A stretch of DNA of 64,000 nucleotides from positions 62,001 through 126,000 of the forward strand of contig JAHLWZ010000518.1 in NCBI GenBank assembly GCA_020536535.1, written 5' to 3'. Below are positions 1-64,000 of this stretch, one piece after another (position 1 is the first letter of the stretch; each line of letters begins with the position of its first letter). A model generated the notes under the pieces. The model was given only the letters and a program-made list of their open reading frames with translations. It was not told the DNA's origin and made no database searches. The position numbers were made by a program, and so were the translations under genes. This DNA is from Pelomyxa schiedti. Lineage: Eukaryota > Protista > Evosea.

Positions 1-3000
1 TTTCAAAATATGAGAATTTTGCTTGGAGTAGAAAAAAAAAAAAAAAGACTGAAGCCATACCGAATCCATCAGTCTTATCATCTGGTATTGTTATATTGCT
101 TAAGTTGATAGGCGTAACACATGAAAATGGCTACCTGAAGTGTTAAGATATCTTGGCGAAGATCATCACCCTCTTTGAAGAGGATATAGATAGTGGGTGC
201 ACCTGGCTCATAGTTTTGGAAGGCAAGCCATAGCGGCAGCTGTATTTAGTCATGGTGACGTAAGGGAAAGTGTGCTCTAAGAGATCACGGAGGTACCTTT
301 TTGGAGTCCATGTACTTACAGTTCTCCAGTATCAGACCGTTCACAGTGAACCTGCGAAATTTAGTGACAAGAAGAGATAAATGTGAACAAGTAAGTACCG
401 GGGATCAATTGGGAGCTGAATGGGACCAGGAAACACAATCCTCGAGAGATTTTGACGTAGCATGCTCAGTCTGTTCTCCTTTGGAGTTACCTTCAGAAGC
501 TTGGCGGTTGTTTCAAGCTCTTTCAGAAGATTGTGCTTTGAAGAAGTTAAAAAAAAAAAACCACGTCTCCAAAAAGCTATTTTAATTGCCTGTTTGACTA
601 TCTCTTCTTTATATGTGCCGGAAGCCCTAATGAAAGCCTCCAGCAGAACTCCGTAGCGCTCGGAGATTGTGTCGATGTGCATTTCAGCCTTGGAGAAATA
701 AGGAAGCATTGGAAAGAAACGAAGTGTACCCGCAGACACCAGTAGAACATGTGACCAATTTTGTTTGTATTAGCAAGCGCACGTTGGAGGAGAAAACGGG
801 CCAAACATGAATCGTGACTTCTCTCGTATTTCAGCACCTTTGGTTTGGGGGGGTGAGAATTTGTGAAGAGAGAGGTGTGTGGTCCAACAAAACCTGTGTC
901 AGTTGAAGCAAAAAATCGGAAACTTCCGCGTCAGTCAGGCCGCTCAAGCAATTAACGGCATACTTTCTGGCGTCCTCATCTGCGAACCGTGCATCCAATA
1001 GCTCAAGTGCATGAGTTGGTTTGAGAAGTGGCCAGGAGAGAAGCAATTTATGGGCTGTTACGACATGGGAAGGGTTGTTCCAGTCCGCACTCCTTAAAAG
1101 TTTTGGCAAAGCTCTTGGCTTGGATTTATGGCTTTCACGAGTTTGCCACAGAAGGGCACGTGCTTCTTTGCTGAGGGATACAAGAGGATCTAGACTACCA
1201 ATAAGAGATAACGCACATTCGTAGTGAACATACCCAAATGAAAAATGTCCTTAAGGAGACGAAGTTGGGAAGGATCAAGAGGTGGACACACATCTGGTGT
1301 TCCTTCAGTATCAGGGAGAGAAAATACTACACGGTTCCTAAACTGTTCAAATTCAACTTCAATAAGAGCCGGGTTTGCGCTAATGGTATTTTCCACACAA
1401 GTTCCTGTCATAAGTTAAGTAGAGCTGAGGCCAATAATCGATCTTTCCTCATACCAATTGGGTTGGGAGCACCTTCCCACATCTTATATCTGTGCCGACC
1501 AGAAATAAGTTCAAGTTTGTGGTTATAAAGCTGGCATCCAAACCATCCAAGTGCCACATCTTTTCTGATTTAGGGTAAGTACTGGGTAGGTGATAGTGGA
1601 AAGTCTCACGAGTCGATTCTTGTGGGGGTTGTTCCCACGGTTTCTTGTGTGGCGAAAACACCAAAACAAATTCTTGCTTCCTACAATTGGAATTAATACA
1701 AAATAACATGAAACTGCAAATCGTGCCACCTTGGGAATGCACTTGATGGAAATAGAAAATGGTGTAAAGAGGCCCCACCCTAAGTAGTGACAGCAAGTAT
1801 CTTGATATGTTACAACAGGAGTAAAAATTTGTTGTGCAATAGGACTGCCACCATGATAGCTGTGGAACAAATAAGTTATATTGTGATTACACTAGGAATA
1901 TACAGTGATGCTGTTGCATATATATTATATACAGAGGGTACTGGGTTTTGTTTTCCCTTGTCGTCGTAGGTAATGGGCCATTTGAGATTAAGAGTTGAAA
2001 GAATCTATTTATTTGGTTATTATTGTGAGAACAAGTGTGTTTTAAGGTAGTGCCTTGGCTTTGAACTTTCGATCAAGTGAAGAGGTCTTTATGGTTGGAC
2101 CCGCATTGACTAACTCTTTTGACACTTCTCTTGCCAATAACTTCACACAAAGTAAGGCAAGTATTCCACTATCCATTGACTTACCTGGTCGATGAGCATA
2201 TTTGCATCAAATTCTTGTGGGGTCGGGGGGGCAGGGACCAGTTTCTCCACAAATGAAAACTCAAGGAATTGCACTTTCTTGGCAACACAACGTCGCACAT
2301 AATCAAACATATTGAAGGTCAACGGCTCTCCATTGTCCCCTCTTGGGATATTAAGTTTTCCGCCTTTCACTCCCTGTACCAGCTTACGTTGTGACAATAT
2401 ACTCATTGAATCCATAAACTTTCAAGACAAAATCATCAATAGTCTTTGTCAGAGTCGTATTGGATTTGATTAACTTGGTGAATACAAGTTTTTGGAGTTC
2501 AATAACAGGGGCATCCGCTGTAGAGAGTGTTACCAATCTGTGTTAAAACCAACTGAATGTACCTTTGAGGGAGAACTTGGATGTCATTCCAGGGATATGC
2601 ACAAGGAAGAATAATGTCATTCTTGGATCAATGAGAGGTGGTTCTGAAAGAATATACACAGATTTTGATTCGAAAGAACGTGTGGTAACGGAAGAAGTTG
2701 ATCTCCCACTTAGTCGTATCCTGGTAGAGACTTTGAGTAATGGCAAAGAAAGGGGAAACAAAACCGGGCAAATTCCCCTCGAATATCATTCACTTCCTCT
2801 TTGAATTTATTTAGTGTGATTTTATAACTGTCTCCAATAAGCTCAAGATTGCTTTCTTTTTTTATTGATTCGGCCATCCGCTCAGCACATTCTGGGGGTG
2901 TTTCACACATATAATTAGGCTCCTGGCACATCTCAAATGTGGGGTTTACCCCAACCCCAAGACACGCTTGATAAAGAGGTAATTCTTTCCTGGTAAAAAT

Positions 3001-4687
3001 TGTCAAATTTGCCTAAGAGATAATGGGTATCTTACATCACATAGGTTTTATAGGATGCTCCCATCCAAAGGTTGATTTCCTTTATTGTTAAACAGTATTT
3101 GCTTGATGGATCGTGCCCACAATCAGCAATTGTAGACTCGATAATTTGTTGGATTGTCCTTTCTATCGGATAAATAAATTCTTTTCTTTCCCCAGAGATA
3201 TTTTTGGAAATAATTTTCACACTCTAAGCACTTAATCAGAAGTGTTTTCCAAGGGACTACATACTGTGTTTGCTTTTTGAGGAGTTTGTTCTGTAGTGGA
3301 GGACTTGAGTGTAAAATCACTTCCACGCAGTACAAGGTCATCATTTTCCTCTGTGACTGTAAAGAAACTAAATTAGGCAATCAAGCAGTCCAGCACTCCA
3401 ACAAGAAAAGAGAATAGTGAAAGAACTACCAGACTTGAGTCGGCAGACACACGGGTTGACTAAGCTGAGCTCAACCAAAGTGAGGTCCAGGGGACAGGTT
3501 AGCCTGGATTCTGTTGTTACAATGTAATCTCTGGGGTCCACATCAAATCTCTTGCATATTTGTGTCCTAAGCTAAAGCAGCTATTAATTCTAAATATAAC
3601 AGGAGTAAAAAAGACTAACCTGGTCCACTGTCATGTCAGGCTCAATCCTGACAACATAGTTGGCTGAGGAAGAAGCTGTATTTCTATCCTCAAAAGTCAC
3701 CCGAGCGGTGCTTGGAGGAGGAAGCAGAGTAGTGGGAGTAGAACCTGCAGAACCAGACATAGAAAGAAGATTGGAGAGACTTTCATCATCCTTTTTTTAA
3801 TTTTTTAGGTTTTCGTTGGGGATTCGGCAAGAAAGTCACCTTTCTAGAGAGTACTAATGACTTTCTTGCAGCTTTCCTGGACGTGTCAATAGTAAGTCTC
3901 TACTTTACATTTGTGCATTATCACCTGTCAGAATCTGCAAGAGATGGAGACGGTGGTCCCATAATGCTTCTTGAGTGTTCTCTTCTCGGGTTAGACTTCA
4001 CACTCTATTACGTGTAATGGAAAGGAAAAGAAAATGAAGGTGGATTACATTGTTATGTGTGGAGTCAGTGAAGGAGGTAGATCGAGAAAGGGGTGGGACC
4101 CCATCAAGACCAAGTGTGCGCATTGCCTTACTGGATGAGGATTTTGTTGCACTAGCTGGCCCACCATCGACATCCTCTTCAATGGTACTGGCAGACTCAT
4201 TTACTTCCCCATCAGGGGGAGGAGGTGGTGGTGGCTGGTCTTCCTCTTCATCAGGAGGTGGAGGTGGGGGTGGGGGAGGGGGTGGTGCTTTGTGTGATTT
4301 GTGTAGCCGAGATACTGTGTGTTGAATAGAAGGATCTAGAGGGCCTTTGTACTGGTCCAGAAATGCAAGTAGAGCCTCTTGTGCCTGGGGAATTTGGTTT
4401 ATGTCAGGATTTTAAGTGGTGACTTCTTATTGTGTTTGTTTGTTTGTTTATAAGCTGGTTTGCGTTATGGCTCACAGTCAACAAATTAGAAAACAAACTT
4501 TTTTTGACTTGGACCTAGCAGCTCGTTCTACTTCCTTTGCAGCAACATACTCGTGGAACAACTCGTTTAATTTATCTTTTTATGGTGTGGGGGAACATTA
4601 AAAACAGCAACGGATTCGTTTGACATGTTAAGGTGTCAAACGCGTCGTTTGGTTTTGTTTGCAGGGAATTGATGCCTCACCAGCCAT
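1..4687 (-). CDS. Class I-type phosphatidylinositol 3-kinase catalytic subunit, multi-exon; 3' end lies beyond the window start
   Basis: Spliced translation gives a Pro-rich N-terminus, ubiquitin-like modules, RBD motif DDFVLKVYGFNEY, C2 (ASLYHGG), helical domain (LPKLLRSADW...ALELLDARFAD, LLQLTQVLKYE) and kinase N-lobe (MDSKKLPLWL, FKEGDDLRQDILTLQ). Start ATG GCT G|gt at 4687 is inferred. Confidence 0.93.
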
Positions 4688-24838: not shown

Positions 24839-24955
24839 GGAAAATGGTTCTTTTAGCACAAATTTTTATATTGTTGTAATGGTGTGACGTGAATGGTAAT
24901 GGGCCTCAATTCCACAGCAGTTACTATCTCTACCTTAGTAAAACTCCTACCACCC

Positions 24956-25965
24956 TTAGTGGTGGCTTTTGTGAGTGTGGGAGTGTTTGTGACCGGATGA
25001 AGAGTGACGTGAGGATGAAGAGGTTGATGATGCTGTTGTGGGGGTGGCAGGGGAAGAAACGGGTGTTGATGCGGGAGGGGAAACTGGTTGAGTTGCGGTG
25101 GCTGTGGGAGATTGTGTCGGAGTGGCGGGTGTTGTTACAGGAGGAGCTCCCGTAGAGGCTGGAGACCCGGGGGGAGGTGCTGCTCCACCCTGTTGGGCAA
25201 CAGCTTCCTTTAAGTATTCCAGGTGCTTCTCCACTACATCAAGAGTGAGAGGCTCCTCTCCTGGGCTTGGGCTGACGGATACTTCCGTAGGTGCTTTTTT
25301 CCACAAATTAACACTTCGTTGGAGGATTTTGACTGCAAGTGCGTAATTTCCAACTGATGCTGTCAGTACTCCTACATCGACTACTTTGTGTTAAACGCAC
25401 AACCCAACTTTGGTGACATACATATTAAAGGGGCCAAATGAGGTGAATGTTTGCCGTGAACTTGCTCCCATAATGTGAGGGAAGCTTTATAAGCTTGTAG
25501 TGCCTTGGTCAAATCTTGAGCTGGACTGCTAGCCATCATGTAGCCTAGCCCAAGAAGTGCTAAGGCAAGATCCTGTATGACCGATTACGCATTCATATTC
25601 AACCCATTGGGATACGAAACTGTTTTGGGTGCAAAAGGCTTTTCTGCTTCCACCATTGCTTTTGTTAAAGTTTCTTGTGCTTTGGGCCAATTCTTAGCAT
25701 CCACAGCCTTTTTTTTGTTTAGAGAATGAGTCCTTGTAAATGACAGTTGTATTTTTCATCATTATCAGTAAGGGAACCCACATGAAGACCAGTCACAAAC
25801 AACAATGAAGCCGATGACGGTTGAGGCGTTCCAAGCCTCTCTTCTGTGGATACAACAACCAAACTTTCTAAGAGCCTTCAAAGCGTTATTGGCAGTCCAA
25901 TTTGATTCAAAGAGTTTGACTGGAAAGTACCGTATTGGGCTCGAAATAGGGCACTGACTAGTCAT
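24956..25965 (-). CDS. TPR-repeat protein with Pro/Thr/His-rich tail
   Basis: LALALLGLGYMM...KALQAYKASLTLWEQVHGKHSPHLA...GNYALAVKILQRSVNLW resembles kinesin-light-chain-type TPR repeats. Confidence 0.65.
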
Positions 25966-62445: not shown

Positions 62446-64000
62446 ATGGTGTTTGAGGCGGTGGTGTCGTTTCTGACGTCGGCCTTCCACGACTACAAGT
62501 TGGAGGCACATTCGTTTCACTCCCTGGTGCCCTTTTTCACGGTGGTTATGCTGTTTGCCGTTGGGGGGTACTTCTCGGGATTCTTTTCGTTCCTCTCCTT
62601 GCTCGAATTCCGTAAGGAGAATCAAAGAGAGCCGACTACGCAAATTGCTCGTGTTAGGTTCAAAGACAAAGTGAGTTTCGTCGTTTTTTTTTCTTCACTT
62701 TTTCCGTACTAACAACAGCTTTCAGCTGTTTTTCAGTATTGGTGTTGTAAATGTTGCACTGTCCACATTCATAGTTGGAGTTGCACCTTCAAAGTACTAT
62801 ATATTTTTCACTTTAAAGGTAGGGATGTCCATGCCATTTTGGATATCAGTTTAATGCACTTCAAGTGTTGTCTTTTGCTTGGTGTACGATACATCAGTTA
62901 CAGGCGTGATGGACGTCAATACTTATTCTGGGACTTTTGTAAGCCAACATAGAACATTTCAAAGTTGTCTGCTAACAAAAAGGGGACAATATTCTTGCAT
63001 ACAGGCTACTGGTCAAATTTCCTCTTCCTTCTCTACGTCTGGTTTTGGGACAGTAGAACAGTCTTCAGAATCTTGTTTGTTGTGGCCAATGGCCCACTTG
63101 CGTGGAGTGTCGTAGCATTTTCAAACCGCACTGTTTTCCACAACAGAGAGCAGATGACAAGCTTGTTCATTCACGTTTCACCAATGCTACTGAGCTACTG
63201 TCTTCGGTGGAACCCAAGTGCTTTTGATGTATGTGAGGGAGGAGCTTTGAATGACTGCTGGGCAAATCCTCTCTGGCTATTCCTTGGTGCACTGCTTAAG
63301 TGCTATGTGATTTGGCTTGTTTTATATTACGTTTGGGTATTTATCATCCTGGGACCACGCGCAAGAGAGAAAAAATATAAGTAACGCATCCACCTCCTTT
63401 TTTCCCCTGTTGAATTCTTTCCTCTTAGGACAATGTTTGACTGGTATACAAGTGAGGGCACTGGACAACTCATTAACCGGTTCCACCCAAATCATCTGGT
63501 CAATAAATTGCTTTACTGCATGATGCATTGTGTATGCTCCACGATTGCTCTATTTTTGGGCTCTCTTTTGTGGAACTCCCATATTGCACATTTCAGTTTT
63601 ATTGTTATCATTAATCTCATTGGGATCTGGCAAGGTGCTGAACATTACTTCCAAGTAACCGTAATTGTGAAATCTTTAAAAACCTAACATTGAACCTCAA
63701 GAGTTTTGCTCAGTCCTATGAGAAAGATTTACTGCTAAAACTTGGTCTTACGGCCACCTCCAAGCAAGGTGCCCTAGATCTCAACCATCTTGAACCTGCT
63801 ATTGTGACTACTGTCAAGGGCTGGGTGTCTGCCCGAAGGGGTACTGATATCCAGGCAGCTGATATACCTCTTCACGCCAACCTCACAAGAGAACTGGGTT
63901 TGAATTCGATCCAAATAAGCGAGATAAAGGGGCTACTGCAGAAAGAGTTCAAAGTTGGTGAAGTAAATCTAAGCGAACTTGAAACTGTGGCTCACGTTGC
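62446..64000 (+). CDS. Glycerophosphocholine acyltransferase (GPC1/DUF2838 family) continuing into an acyl-carrier-protein-like domain; runs off the window end
   Basis: DK..F..GV.N, R...Y......Y...DFCY..N, GPLAWSV..F.N..VFH...MTSLFIH..P, IWQGA..Y; then intron 63655-63701 and an open frame ...ANLTRELGLNSIQISEIKGLLQKEFKV...LETVAHV. Confidence 0.85.

What the first reader, a model, noticed from the sequence alone, without database searches (positions are those of the whole stretch)
62446..64000. GPC1-type membrane acyltransferase fused in frame to an acyl carrier protein (ACP)-like domain
Seen: after the last GPC1 helix (IWQGAEHYFQ), a GT-AG intron (63655-63701, with CTAAC) leads to SFAQSYEKDLLLKL, which matches the usual GPC1 C-terminus. 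The frame then stays open to base 64000: HLEPAIVTTVKGWVSARRGTDIQAADIPLHANLTRELGLNSIQISEIKGLLQKEFKVGEVNLSELETVAHVA. This fits the ACP/phosphopantetheine-binding pattern (..L..ELG.(D/N)S....I...L.KEF.V......TV..V), with the attachment Ser at 63906-63908 and N in place of the usual D. Known: yeast and plant GPC1/GPCAT are stand-alone enzymes that acylate glycerophosphocholine using acyl-CoA. Inference: a tethered ACP could supply the acyl chain in cis, a self-contained lipid-salvage module conceptually like the acyl-ACP-dependent bacterial Aas. Further domains, such as an adenylation/acyl-ACP ligase, may follow outside the window. I do not know of a described GPC1-ACP fusion. The ORF track misses it because there is no stop codon in the window.
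Basis: partly seen in the sequence, partly recalled or inferred. Interest (0 to 1): 0.85.

Follow-up and report, generated by a model that had tools for sequence, protein, structure and literature searches.

The report
GPC1 acyltransferase–ACP–acyl-ACP synthetase fusion enzyme
An anaerobic amoeba encodes one membrane protein that joins a glycerophosphocholine-type acyltransferase to its own acyl carrier domain and a fatty-acid-activating enzyme. It is a rare, uncharacterised eukaryotic counterpart of the bacterial lipid-repair enzyme Aas and could rebuild membrane lipids from free fatty acids without coenzyme A.

Summary
The window ends inside a 19-exon gene of Pelomyxa schiedti. The assembly statistics match the published genome. 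The product (database protein P0001, 991 aa) has three domains:
- a GPC1/DUF2838 membrane acyltransferase (99 bits);
- a PP-binding carrier domain, above Pfam's cut-off, with a confident four-helix ACP fold and Ser400 at the start of helix II;

The same three-domain protein occurs in a Mastigella eilhardi transcript (55% identity). Related proteins occur in Bigelowiella natans and on one unnamed assembly contig. The ACP and synthetase are colinear homologues of hundreds of bacterial PlsC-ACP-synthetase proteins, so the bacterial PlsC acyltransferase module is replaced here by the unrelated GPC1 module. Spliced RNA contigs link the ACP exon to the synthetase exons. The GPC1 exons have no RNA cover in this organism.

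The likely function is inferred, not shown: fatty acid plus ATP gives acyl-S-ACP in cis, and the GPC1 domain (invariant Cys131/His187) then passes the acyl group to glycerophosphocholine or a related acceptor.

The fusion is rare: none of 17 environmental GPC1 loci shows it. No searchable paper describes it. The scan had noted this same stretch once before (s1-396619), not on other DNA.

The parts
62446..62670 (+). Exon 1 (residues 1-75): start codon and the N-terminal hydrophobic helix of the GPC1 domain
   Evidence: Maps exactly to P0001 residues 1-75. The donor GTGAGT is at 62671.
62726..62818 (+). Exon 2 (residues 76-106): start of the DUF2838 core
   Evidence: Pfam DUF2838 at 18.9 bits for this exon alone, profile positions 3-32. 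Exact match to P0001.
62866..62938 (+). Exon 3 (residues 107-131): ends in the family-invariant DFCY motif. The codon of Cys131, the candidate catalytic nucleophile, is split between 62938 and 63005-63006.
   Evidence: D129, F130, C131 and Y132 are invariant in 12 of 12 fused and stand-alone GPC1 sequences. A Cys/His dyad is proposed for the GPC1 family in bioRxiv 10.1101/2022.07.06.498872.
63005..63380 (+). Exon 4 (residues 131-256): DUF2838 core with the invariant NGPLAWS motif, His176, His187 and Pro190
   Evidence: Pfam DUF2838 at 42.5 bits, E 8.5e-11, for this exon alone. Invariant columns are listed. His187 lies in helix 178-199, two helices after the Cys131 helix.
63429..63654 (+). Exon 5 (residues 256-331): the last two transmembrane helices, ending ...GAEHYFQ
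   Evidence: Helices 278-302 and 307-344 in the AlphaFold model.
63655..63701 (+). Intron 5: 47 nt, GTAACC..CTCAAG, phase 0, with CTAAC at 63684-63688 and an in-frame TAA at 63685-63687 if retained
   Evidence: Its size and ends are typical of the gene's 18 introns (39-74 nt). Splicing restores the family tail motif (HYFQ|SFAQSY against YYF.VFA.RY in stand-alone GPC1). The modelled helix runs unbroken across the junction. No RNA contig of this organism covers it. The Mastigella transcript has the same uninterrupted sequence.
63702..64000 (+). Exon 6, in-window part (the exon runs to 64058; residues 332-450). A single exon encodes both the GPC1 C-terminal tail and the whole carrier domain.
   Evidence: for the translation and for the mapping. 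Because the tail and the ACP lie in one exon with no stop, their fusion does not depend on any splice.
63780..64000 (+). Acyl carrier (PP-binding) domain, residues 358-437. It ends 19 nt beyond the window.
   Evidence: Pfam PF00550 at 26.6 bits against a cut-off of 20.8. AlphaFold pLDDT above 90, helices 363-377, 400-414 and 427-437. All top 50 Foldseek matches are carrier proteins.
63906..63908 (+). Codon of Ser400, the predicted 4'-phosphopantetheine attachment site (LGLNS; Asn where bacteria have Asp)
   Evidence: Ser is invariant in 9 of 9 sequences and in 53 of 53. It sits at the N-terminus of helix II.
64000..64000 (+). Point where the gene leaves the window. The remainder is the end of exon 6, 13 more exons and the stop at L002 4285-4287 (extrapolated window 66284-66286; L002 position = window - 61999). 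It encodes the AP..W linker and the Aas-type acyl-ACP synthetase domain (residues 472-991).
   Evidence: AMP-binding at 195 bits. NCBIfam acyl-ACP synthetase models score 352, 325, 307 and 241 bits. All 13 introns in this part are confirmed by spliced RNA contigs, one of which links the ACP exon to the synthetase exons.

Best explanation
This is one real, intron-rich gene of the anaerobic amoeba Pelomyxa schiedti. It encodes a three-domain membrane enzyme of 991 aa (992 with the extra codon seen in RNA):
- an N-terminal multi-pass GPC1/GPCAT-type acyltransferase (about residues 1-345);
- an acyl carrier domain (358-437, Ser400);
- a C-terminal Aas-type acyl-ACP synthetase (472-991).

Proposed mechanism:
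1. A phosphopantetheinyl transferase converts Ser400 to the holo form.
2. The synthetase domain adenylates a free fatty acid with ATP and loads it as a thioester on the arm of its own carrier domain.
3. The carrier, which sits between two flexible linkers, swings to the GPC1 domain.
4. The acyl group is passed on, probably through the invariant Cys131/His187 pair, to glycerophosphocholine or a related acceptor such as glycerophosphoethanolamine, giving a lysophospholipid.

The result would be a self-contained route from free fatty acid to membrane lipid that does not need coenzyme A. In evolutionary terms it is a bacterial-type acyltransferase-ACP-synthetase (Aas-like) chassis in which the PlsC acyltransferase module is replaced by the unrelated eukaryotic GPC1 module.

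Shown: the architecture, the conserved residues, the carrier fold, the homology of ACP plus synthetase to the bacterial proteins, and spliced transcripts for the ACP-synthetase part.
Inferred: phosphopantetheinylation, the direction of acyl flow, and the acceptor.
For: Architecture:
- Single exons match DUF2838, PP-binding and AMP-binding.
- The full protein P0001 has DUF2838 at 74-183 (99 bits), PP-binding at 380-433 (22.2 bits, cut-off 20.8) and AMP-binding at 478-849 (195 bits).
- P0001 maps exactly onto the DNA as 19 exons, and all 18 introns are GT..AG.
- The GPC1 tail and the ACP lie in one exon.

Conservation:
- The Mastigella eilhardi transcript P0022 (complete ORF, 55% identity) has the same three domains and an invariant LTRELGLNSIQ.SEIKGLL core.
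- Bigelowiella natans P0141/P0059 has DUF2838 plus AMP-binding, and its carrier Ser aligns. A Logan contig carries a DUF2838 ORF directly upstream of P0023.
- The four eukaryotic proteins sit on one side of a branch with SH-aLRT 99.

Carrier domain: confident ACP fold, and all 50 top Foldseek matches are carrier proteins. Ser400 is invariant in 53 of 53 sequences.

Synthetase domain:
- Its best curated matches are acyl-ACP synthetase models, well above acyl-CoA ligase models.
- Motifs TSGSESAPKG, GYGITE, YITGDLG, GRLKR and GSGK(976) are present and invariant among the three full-length eukaryotic proteins.
- Its closest relatives are bacterial PlsC-ACP-A proteins with the same domain order. 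The alignment starts at the ACP and runs to the C-terminus, E 2e-100.

GPC1 domain:
- Every position that is invariant in nine stand-alone GPC1 sequences is kept, including C131, H176 and H187.
- The model matches the fungal GPC1 Atlas cluster with TM 0.72.

Context:
- The genome has PPTase (ACPS) matches over the cut-off.
- This is its only DUF2838 locus.
- RNA contigs splice the ACP exon to the synthetase exons and run on to the 3' UTR.

Precedent:
- E. coli Aas makes acyl-ACP and uses it at once for lysolipid acylation (PMC11416262).
- Gpc1 acylates GPC and GPE from a phosphopantetheine thioester, acyl-CoA (PMC5122774).
- A Cys/His dyad and an acyl-enzyme mechanism have been proposed for the GPC1/TMEM164 superfamily.
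Against: - There is no biochemical evidence of any kind.
- No acyl-ACP-dependent GPC1 enzyme is known. The characterised donors are acyl-CoA and lysolipids.
- The residue before the attachment Ser is Asn here (Thr in Bigelowiella), whereas Asp is nearly invariant in the bacterial relatives. Modification of Ser400 is therefore unproven. The Bigelowiella carrier does not reach Pfam's PP-binding threshold.
- RNA contigs of this organism do not cover the GPC1 exons or intron 5. The single-transcript claim for the 5' half rests on the annotated model, the shared exon 6 and the orthologous transcripts.
- It was not determined which side of the membrane the GPC1 C-terminus faces. It must face the ATP-containing compartment.
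- Cys131/His187 were assigned as the dyad from conservation and helix spacing, not from a superposition on yeast Gpc1.
Confidence: 0.6

Rival explanations
1. Same fused protein, different chemistry at the membrane domain. The GPC1-like domain would use the tethered acyl-ACP to re-acylate a lysophospholipid or another lipid acceptor, as bacterial Aas and the related transacylase TMEM164 do. The enzyme would then be a lysolipid repair enzyme rather than a GPC salvage enzyme.
For: The bacterial relatives on the same ACP-synthetase chassis carry a PlsC domain and are named acyl-[ACP]--phospholipid O-acyltransferases. Gpc1 also handles lysolipids as substrates in transacylation. TMEM164, in the same superfamily, acylates lyso-ether lipids. 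The eukaryotic fusion proteins are only 22-32% identical to the stand-alone GPC1 sequences.
Against: All GPC1-family invariant residues are kept and the Pfam match covers the whole profile. The only biochemically defined acceptors for acyl-thioester-dependent GPC1 activity are GPC and GPE. This is the genome's only DUF2838 gene, so it probably carries the ancestral GPC1 function.
Confidence: 0.17
2. The carrier and synthetase do not feed the GPC1 domain. The GPC1 part would work on acyl-CoA or lysolipids as usual, or serve mainly as a membrane anchor. The ACP-synthetase part would deliver acyl chains to another enzyme in trans, or the carrier would be a decayed, unmodified linker.
For: Asp is replaced by Asn or Thr before the attachment Ser in the eukaryotic clade. 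The carrier scores only just above Pfam's cut-off. The genome holds about 70 other PP-binding matches, many in very long open frames, so other acyl-carrier chemistry exists there.
Against: The carrier core is the best-conserved stretch of the linker region between Pelomyxa and Mastigella, and the Ser is invariant in all four eukaryotic and all bacterial homologues. The order acyltransferase-ACP-synthetase is conserved from bacteria to eukaryotes even though the acyltransferase module differs, which points to a functional coupling. The catalytic candidates of the GPC1 domain are intact, so it is not a mere anchor.
Confidence: 0.15
3. Gene-model artefact. Two neighbouring genes (a stand-alone GPC1 and an ACP-synthetase gene) would have been merged by annotation, and the apparent intron at 63655-63701 would be a real stop-containing spacer.
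For: No RNA contig of this organism covers L002 400-1938, which includes intron 5. On the Logan contig a prokaryote-style gene caller reports the DUF2838 part and P0023 as separate ORFs.
Against: - Exon 6 itself encodes both the GPC1 tail, which is homologous to the tail of stand-alone GPC1, and the ACP, with no stop between them.
- The family motif HYFQ|SFAQSY is restored only by this splice, and the modelled helix crosses it.
- The intron is canonical and of typical size.
- Complete or long transcripts from Mastigella and Bigelowiella encode the fusion in one ORF.
- P0023 begins inside the GPC1 tail.
Confidence: 0.04

Closest known systems
Escherichia coli Aas (2-acyl-GPE acyltransferase / acyl-ACP synthetase; NCBIfam PRK08043)
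   Same: It is a bifunctional enzyme that activates a free fatty acid with ATP onto ACP and immediately uses the acyl-ACP to acylate a glycerophospholipid precursor at the membrane (PMC11416262). The synthetase domain is homologous: 241 bits to PRK08043 and 352 bits to the related PRK08633. The acyltransferase is N-terminal and the synthetase C-terminal.
   Different: The Aas acyltransferase is a peripheral PlsC-type domain, whereas here it is an unrelated multi-pass GPC1 domain. No PF01553 match was found in P0001. Aas uses free holo-ACP and has no carrier domain (transferase 1-203, synthase 204-719). Its acceptor is a lysophospholipid. It is bacterial.
Bacterial PlsC-ACP-AMP-binding proteins (about 890 aa) and MFS-PlsC-ACP-AMP-binding proteins (about 1,290 aa). 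They are uncharacterised; source names include Chlamydiota, Lentisphaeria, Cloacimonadota and Planctomycetota.
   Same: They are the closest sequence relatives of the ACP-synthetase part, at 38-44% identity over residues 470-991. The domain order is the same (acyltransferase, ACP, synthetase). The attachment Ser, the AP..W linker and the synthetase are colinear.
   Different: The N-terminal module is PlsC (PF01553), not GPC1. Asp precedes the Ser. They are prokaryotic and have no introns. I found no functional study of them. The searchable literature says only that LplT-Aas fusions are uncharacterised.
Yeast Gpc1 and plant GPCAT (Pfam PF10998/DUF2838)
   Same: The N-terminal domain is a full-length member of this family: 99 bits over profile positions 1-111, all family-invariant residues kept, and a fold match of TM 0.72 to the fungal GPC1 cluster. 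The characterised enzymes transfer acyl groups from a phosphopantetheine thioester (acyl-CoA) to GPC, and more weakly to GPE.
   Different: The characterised members are stand-alone proteins of about 350-450 aa with 'only one defined domain' and use acyl-CoA or lysolipids as donors. Here about 650 further residues supply a tethered carrier and its loading enzyme.
TMEM164 and the AIG1/TMEM164/GPC1/YwaF/YpjA superfamily
   Same: They share a predicted 6-TM core with a nucleophile on one helix and an invariant His two helices later. TMEM164 needs its Cys for acyl transfer, and an acyl-enzyme intermediate has been proposed. Cys131 and His187 fit this pattern.
   Different: TMEM164 takes the acyl chain from phosphatidylcholine, is only remotely related in sequence, and has no carrier or synthetase domain.

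Membership tests
GPC1/GPCAT (Pfam PF10998, DUF2838) | Significant match to the family profile over its full length | tested here: met
   P0001 residues 74-183 match profile positions 1-111 at 99.2 bits (cut-off 25.2). Single exons also match.
GPC1/GPCAT (Pfam PF10998, DUF2838) | Family-invariant residues, including the proposed Cys/His catalytic pair | tested here: met
   DFC131Y, NGPL, F175-H176, S183, H187 and P190 are invariant in 3 fused and 9 stand-alone sequences. The assignment of C131/H187 as the dyad rests on helix spacing and the published scheme, not on a superposition with yeast Gpc1.
GPC1/GPCAT (Pfam PF10998, DUF2838) | Multi-pass helical membrane fold of the family | tested here: met
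   AlphaFold model with pTM 0.74 and 9 long helices. The best Atlas match is the 'Glycerophosphocholine acyltransferase 1' cluster, TM 0.72 over 282 residues.
GPC1/GPCAT (Pfam PF10998, DUF2838) | Acylation of glycerophosphocholine | not testable with these tools
   This needs an enzyme assay.
GPC1/GPCAT (Pfam PF10998, DUF2838) | Stand-alone single-domain architecture of the characterised members | tested here: not met
   About 650 residues (ACP and synthetase) follow the GPC1 tail. Stand-alone homologues stop 10-40 residues after the tail motif.
Acyl carrier protein / PP-binding (PF00550) | Profile match above the curated cut-off | tested here: met
   26.6 bits for the exon and 22.2 bits in the whole protein, against a cut-off of 20.8. 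The Mastigella orthologue scores 23.7-27.4 bits. The Bigelowiella orthologue does not reach the threshold.
Acyl carrier protein / PP-binding (PF00550) | Four-helix bundle with the attachment Ser at the N-terminus of helix II | tested here: met
   pLDDT above 90 for residues 358-437, and helix II starts at Ser400. All top 50 Foldseek PDB matches are carrier proteins, with rmsd 1.6-2.3 A for the stand-alone ACPs.
Acyl carrier protein / PP-binding (PF00550) | Conserved (D)S attachment motif | tested here: inconclusive
   Ser is invariant in 53 of 53 sequences. The preceding Asp is Asn in three eukaryotic members and Thr in Bigelowiella. From my own knowledge, peptidyl carrier domains with His at this position are modified normally, so Asn does not disqualify the site.
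Acyl carrier protein / PP-binding (PF00550) | 4'-phosphopantetheinylation of the Ser, and a PPTase available in the genome | not testable with these tools
   The modification itself cannot be tested here. A prerequisite is met: two ACPS (PF01648) matches over the cut-off on contig C561.
Aas-type acyl-ACP synthetase (NCBIfam PRK08633 / PRK06814 / PRK06334 / PRK08043) | Closer to acyl-ACP synthetase models than to acyl-CoA ligase models | tested here: met
   352, 325, 307 and 241 bits against at most 181 bits. The scores lie below the whole-protein cut-offs of all four models. For the three multi-domain models only the synthetase half can match; PRK06334 is a 539-position synthetase-only model that matches over nearly its full length (307 bits against a cut-off of 847).
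Aas-type acyl-ACP synthetase (NCBIfam PRK08633 / PRK06814 / PRK06334 / PRK08043) | Adenylate-forming core motifs (P-loop, GYGxTE, TGD, GRxKR, C-terminal catalytic Lys) | tested here: met
   Motifs start at residues 643, 781, 868, 884 and 973 (K976). They are invariant in the three full-length eukaryotic proteins.
Aas-type bifunctional enzyme | N-terminal PlsC-type (PF01553) acyltransferase domain | tested here: not met
   There is no PF01553 match in P0001, P0022 or P0141. DUF2838 stands in its place. The protein therefore works like an Aas but is not a member of the Aas family as a whole.

The most novel reading that the evidence does not exclude
GPC1-family membrane acyltransferases can take their acyl chain from a protein-tethered phosphopantetheine thioester. 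This tri-domain enzyme would then be a complete, CoA-independent pathway from free fatty acid to lysophospholipid in a single protein. It would have arisen by swapping the PlsC module of a bacterial-type acyltransferase-ACP-synthetase ancestor for the unrelated eukaryotic GPC1 module, and it is now scattered across distant eukaryotes (Archamoebae and a chlorarachniophyte). If so, it offers a natural, covalently tethered donor-enzyme pair for working out the still unknown mechanism and structure of the GPC1 family.
Probability: 0.5. Interest if true: 0.72.

Novelty: new variant of a known kind. Interest (0 to 1): 0.62.

Why it matters
- GPC1/GPCAT is a young enzyme family (cloned in 2016) with no solved structure by sequence search. 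Its discoverers stressed that it has no recognisable acyl-binding motif. A natural fusion that tethers the acyl donor and its loading enzyme to the GPC1 domain gives a direct handle on donor recognition and on the proposed Cys/His acyl-enzyme mechanism.
- It also shows that the Aas principle (activate a free fatty acid on ACP and use it at once at the membrane) exists in eukaryotes, with a non-homologous acyltransferase on the same ACP-synthetase chassis. That is a clear case of module swapping.
- For anaerobic amoebae that feed on bacteria, a CoA-independent route from scavenged fatty acids and glycerophosphodiesters to membrane lipids would be physiologically meaningful.
- The bacterial relatives with a built-in ACP are numerous and apparently unstudied too.

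Tried and rejected
- **Hand-built exon model.** My first model of the region after the ACP (one intron, L002 2206-2328) was wrong. P0001, the Mastigella alignment and the RNA joints show a small extra exon (L002 2249-2302) flanked by introns of 44 and 40 nt.
- **Complex prediction.** Complex prediction on the GPC1 domain plus the ACP gave no answer: score 0.00, alignments not used, controls not run. This is evidence neither for nor against binding.
- **Atlas feature search.** The protein-atlas search with residues 1-470 gave no usable hit.
- **Solved structures.** There is no PDB relative of the GPC1 domain by sequence. The nearest solved adenylate-forming enzymes are distant (best E 1.4e-25, an oxalate-CoA ligase) and say nothing about the acyl acceptor.
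- **Literature.** Searches for DUF2838; for GPCAT with acyl-ACP synthetase; for GPC1 structure and catalysis; for LplT, Aas and ACP; and within the Pelomyxa genome paper found no description of the fusion.
- **Metagenome scan.** The scan with the GPC1 domain returned 17 loci. None had an ACP or synthetase hit in its flanks. This shows rarity, not absence.
- **Profile search.** A search with the three full-length fusions found no additional eukaryotic member.
- **Bacterial contamination rejected.** The gene has 18 spliceosomal introns, 13 of which are seen spliced in RNA.
- **Internal cDNA ends.** I considered whether the template-switch-oligo ends inside the gene (L002 2279, 2718, 3438, 3769) mark an internal promoter. 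They differ between runs and look like truncated cDNAs, so they are not evidence for a separate ACP-synthetase transcript.
- **Joined spliced model.** I never typed or searched a joined spliced model. Exons were searched one by one by reference. All full-length work used P0001, a database protein returned.
Full report
**Observation.**
- An ATG at 62446 opens a hydrophobic protein split by short introns.
- The last helix ends ...IWQGAEHYFQ at 63654.
- A 47-nt GT..AG intron follows at 63655-63701. It has CTAAC at 63684-63688 and an in-frame TAA at 63685-63687.
- The frame then resumes with SFAQSYEKDLLLKL and stays open to the window end.
- Translated one exon at a time by reference, the exons match Pfam DUF2838 (18.9 and 42.5 bits), and the last in-window exon matches PP-binding at 26.6 bits against a cut-off of 20.8.
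- The same exon aligns to solved ACPs, with its Ser opposite their attachment Ser.

**Beyond the window.**
- The window is G000:C518:62001-126000. I fetched the next 8 kb as L002, where window coordinate = L002 + 61999. The frames downstream of 64000 hold an adenylate-forming enzyme in many short exons.
- An exhaustive search with the ACP exon returned a 991-aa database protein, P0001, that is 100% identical at its residues 332-450.
- P0001 maps exactly onto L002 as 19 exons from 447 to 4284.
- P0001 carries DUF2838 (74-183, 99 bits), PP-binding (380-433, 22.2 bits) and AMP-binding (478-849, 195 bits).
- I never typed or searched a joined spliced model of my own. Exons were searched singly by reference, and the full-length analyses used P0001 as returned by the tool.

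**Organism.** G000 has 52,367,397 bases in 5,337 contigs. The Pelomyxa schiedti assembly is described as 52.4 Mb in 5,337 scaffolds (PMC8887013). An earlier scan note also names this amoeba. That paper does not mention this protein.

**Is the fusion real?**
- Exon 6 (63702-64058) alone encodes both the GPC1 C-terminal tail and the whole carrier domain, so that link needs no splice.
- The tail is homologous to the tail of stand-alone GPC1 proteins (HYFQ|SFAQSY against YYF.VFA.RY). The motif is restored only by removing intron 5. The AlphaFold model runs one helix (307-344) across the junction.
- Contigs from four single-cell RNA-seq runs (one study) cover the gene from L002 1939, inside the ACP exon, to 4316, past the stop. 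They show all 13 introns of that part spliced. One contig joins the ACP exon to the synthetase exons.
- The GPC1 exons and intron 5 have no RNA cover in these 3'-biased libraries, so this step rests on other evidence. A complete-ORF Trinity transcript of Mastigella eilhardi (P0022, 1,015 aa, 55% identical) has the same three domains. A Bigelowiella natans gene model and MMETSP transcript (P0141, P0059) combine DUF2838 and AMP-binding. A Logan contig carries a DUF2838 ORF directly upstream of the fragment P0023, which itself begins in the GPC1 tail.

**The carrier domain.**
- In an alignment of 53 eukaryotic and bacterial homologues the attachment Ser (Ser400) is invariant. The preceding Asp is nearly invariant in bacteria but is Asn in Pelomyxa, Mastigella and P0023, and Thr in Bigelowiella.
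- AlphaFold gives pLDDT above 90 for residues 358-437, with the canonical helix I, loop, Ser at the start of helix II, short helix III and helix IV.
- All 50 best Foldseek matches in the PDB are carrier proteins. For the stand-alone ACPs the target-normalised TM is 0.72-0.83 and rmsd 1.6-2.3 A.

**The synthetase domain and its kin.**
- Curated NCBIfam models rank acyl-ACP synthetases first. PRK08633 scores 352 bits, PRK06814 325, PRK06334 307 and E. coli-type Aas PRK08043 241. The best acyl-CoA ligase model scores 181.
- The core motifs, including the C-terminal catalytic Lys (K976), are present.
- The nearest relatives after the eukaryotic proteins are hundreds of bacterial proteins at 38-44% identity. 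Their architecture is PlsC acyltransferase, ACP, AMP-binding (about 890 aa), or the same behind an MFS domain (about 1,290 aa).
- A pairwise alignment with one of them starts exactly at the ACP motif and runs unbroken to the C-terminus, E 2e-100. The ACP, the AP..W linker and the synthetase were therefore inherited as one unit.
- In a tree of this region the four eukaryotic proteins lie on one side of a branch with SH-aLRT 99 (quick search, unrooted, one long branch).
- E. coli Aas has no carrier domain and uses free holo-ACP (PMC11416262).

**The GPC1 domain.**
- The metagenome scan supplied nine stand-alone GPC1 ORFs. In a 12-sequence alignment the invariant positions include DFC131Y, NGPL, F175-H176, S183, H187 and P190, and the fusion proteins keep all of them.
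- The GPC1 family has been placed in a superfamily with a nucleophile/His dyad on helices two apart, and TMEM164 needs its Cys for acyl transfer (bioRxiv 10.1101/2022.07.06.498872). Cys131 (helix 126-143) and His187 (helix 178-199) fit that spacing.
- The model's best Atlas match is the fungal 'Glycerophosphocholine acyltransferase 1' cluster, TM 0.72.
- This is the only DUF2838 locus in the genome.

**Mechanism (inferred).** Acyl-CoA, the known Gpc1 donor (PMC5122774), and acyl-ACP carry the acyl group on the same phosphopantetheine thioester. Replacing the soluble donor by a tethered one is therefore chemically conservative. I propose these steps:
1. A PPTase modifies Ser400. ACPS matches exist on contig C561.
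2. The synthetase adenylates a free fatty acid and loads its own carrier.
3. The carrier delivers the chain to Cys131/His187.
4. The acyl group ends up on GPC, or on GPE, which yeast Gpc1 also accepts at about a quarter of the rate.

None of these steps is shown. The Asn before the Ser, the unknown sidedness of the GPC1 C-terminus and the absence of any acyl-ACP-dependent GPC1 precedent are the main doubts. A controlled complex prediction gave no verdict.

**How common, how new.**
- A word-indexed search over 5.8 billion proteins for long relatives of the GPC1+ACP part found only P0001 and P0022. A profile of the fusions added no eukaryotic member.
- None of 17 environmental GPC1 loci has an ACP or synthetase in its flanks, and at least seven of them have more than 1.5 kb downstream. 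The closest one is a stand-alone 373-aa ORF.
- No paper in the searchable library mentions the fusion.
- The proteins do exist as unannotated predictions in public databases.
- The scan had noted this same stretch once before, from another window (s1-396619). It has not been noted on other DNA.

**Verdict.** The finding is real, correctly read and extended. It is a new variant of a known kind (Aas-like coupled fatty-acid activation and acyl transfer), built with a non-homologous acyltransferase and a built-in carrier.

Noticed in passing
L002:3850 (extrapolated window coordinate 65849, beyond the window end): RNA contigs from three of the four runs carry an extra TTT after this base, where the assembly lacks it. 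It adds a Phe, giving GRLKR-F-VKVAGEM, which matches Mastigella, Bigelowiella and the bacterial relatives (RLKRF.K). The genome assembly, and so P0001, probably lacks one codon here, or the strains differ.
   Followed up: partly
Proteins P0024-P0140 and P0144 (bacterial): A large bacterial family of PlsC-ACP-AMP-binding proteins (about 890 aa) and MFS-PlsC-ACP-AMP-binding proteins (about 1,290 aa) has a built-in carrier domain. 97 of the 117 sequences I checked have a carrier-type Ser motif at the expected place. They score far below the cut-offs of the curated Aas models, and I found no study of them. They would be self-contained versions of LplT/Aas.
   Followed up: partly
G000 contigs C753, C1181, C424, C259, C151, C176, C508 and others: The genome holds about 70 PP-binding matches, many inside open frames of 1,000-2,700 codons, some with adenylation-like domains. 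This is an unexpectedly rich set of PKS/NRPS-like genes for an anaerobic amoeba assembly. I did not check whether they are eukaryotic, laterally acquired or from symbionts.
   Followed up: no
L025:560-2944 (metagenome contig Ga0209295_1010325): One uninterrupted 795-codon ORF combines a TruD pseudouridine-synthase region (PF01142, 73.8 bits) with a C-terminal GPC1 domain. It is either another GPC1 fusion or a read-through of two genes.
   Followed up: partly
L002:2279, 2718, 3438, 3769 (beyond the window end): RNA contigs end at these internal positions with template-switch-oligo sequence. The positions differ between runs, which suggests truncated cDNAs rather than a defined internal transcription start.
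   Followed up: no
L002:4681-7401, minus strand (beyond the window end): A convergent, multi-exon gene with long hydrophobic ORFs starts about 400 bases after the stop codon of the fusion gene. I did not examine it.
   Followed up: no
G000:C561:21307-21441 and 24953-25231: Two separate ACPS (PPTase) domain matches lie 3.5 kb apart on one contig, possibly two tandem PPTase genes. I did not work out the gene structures.
   Followed up: partly
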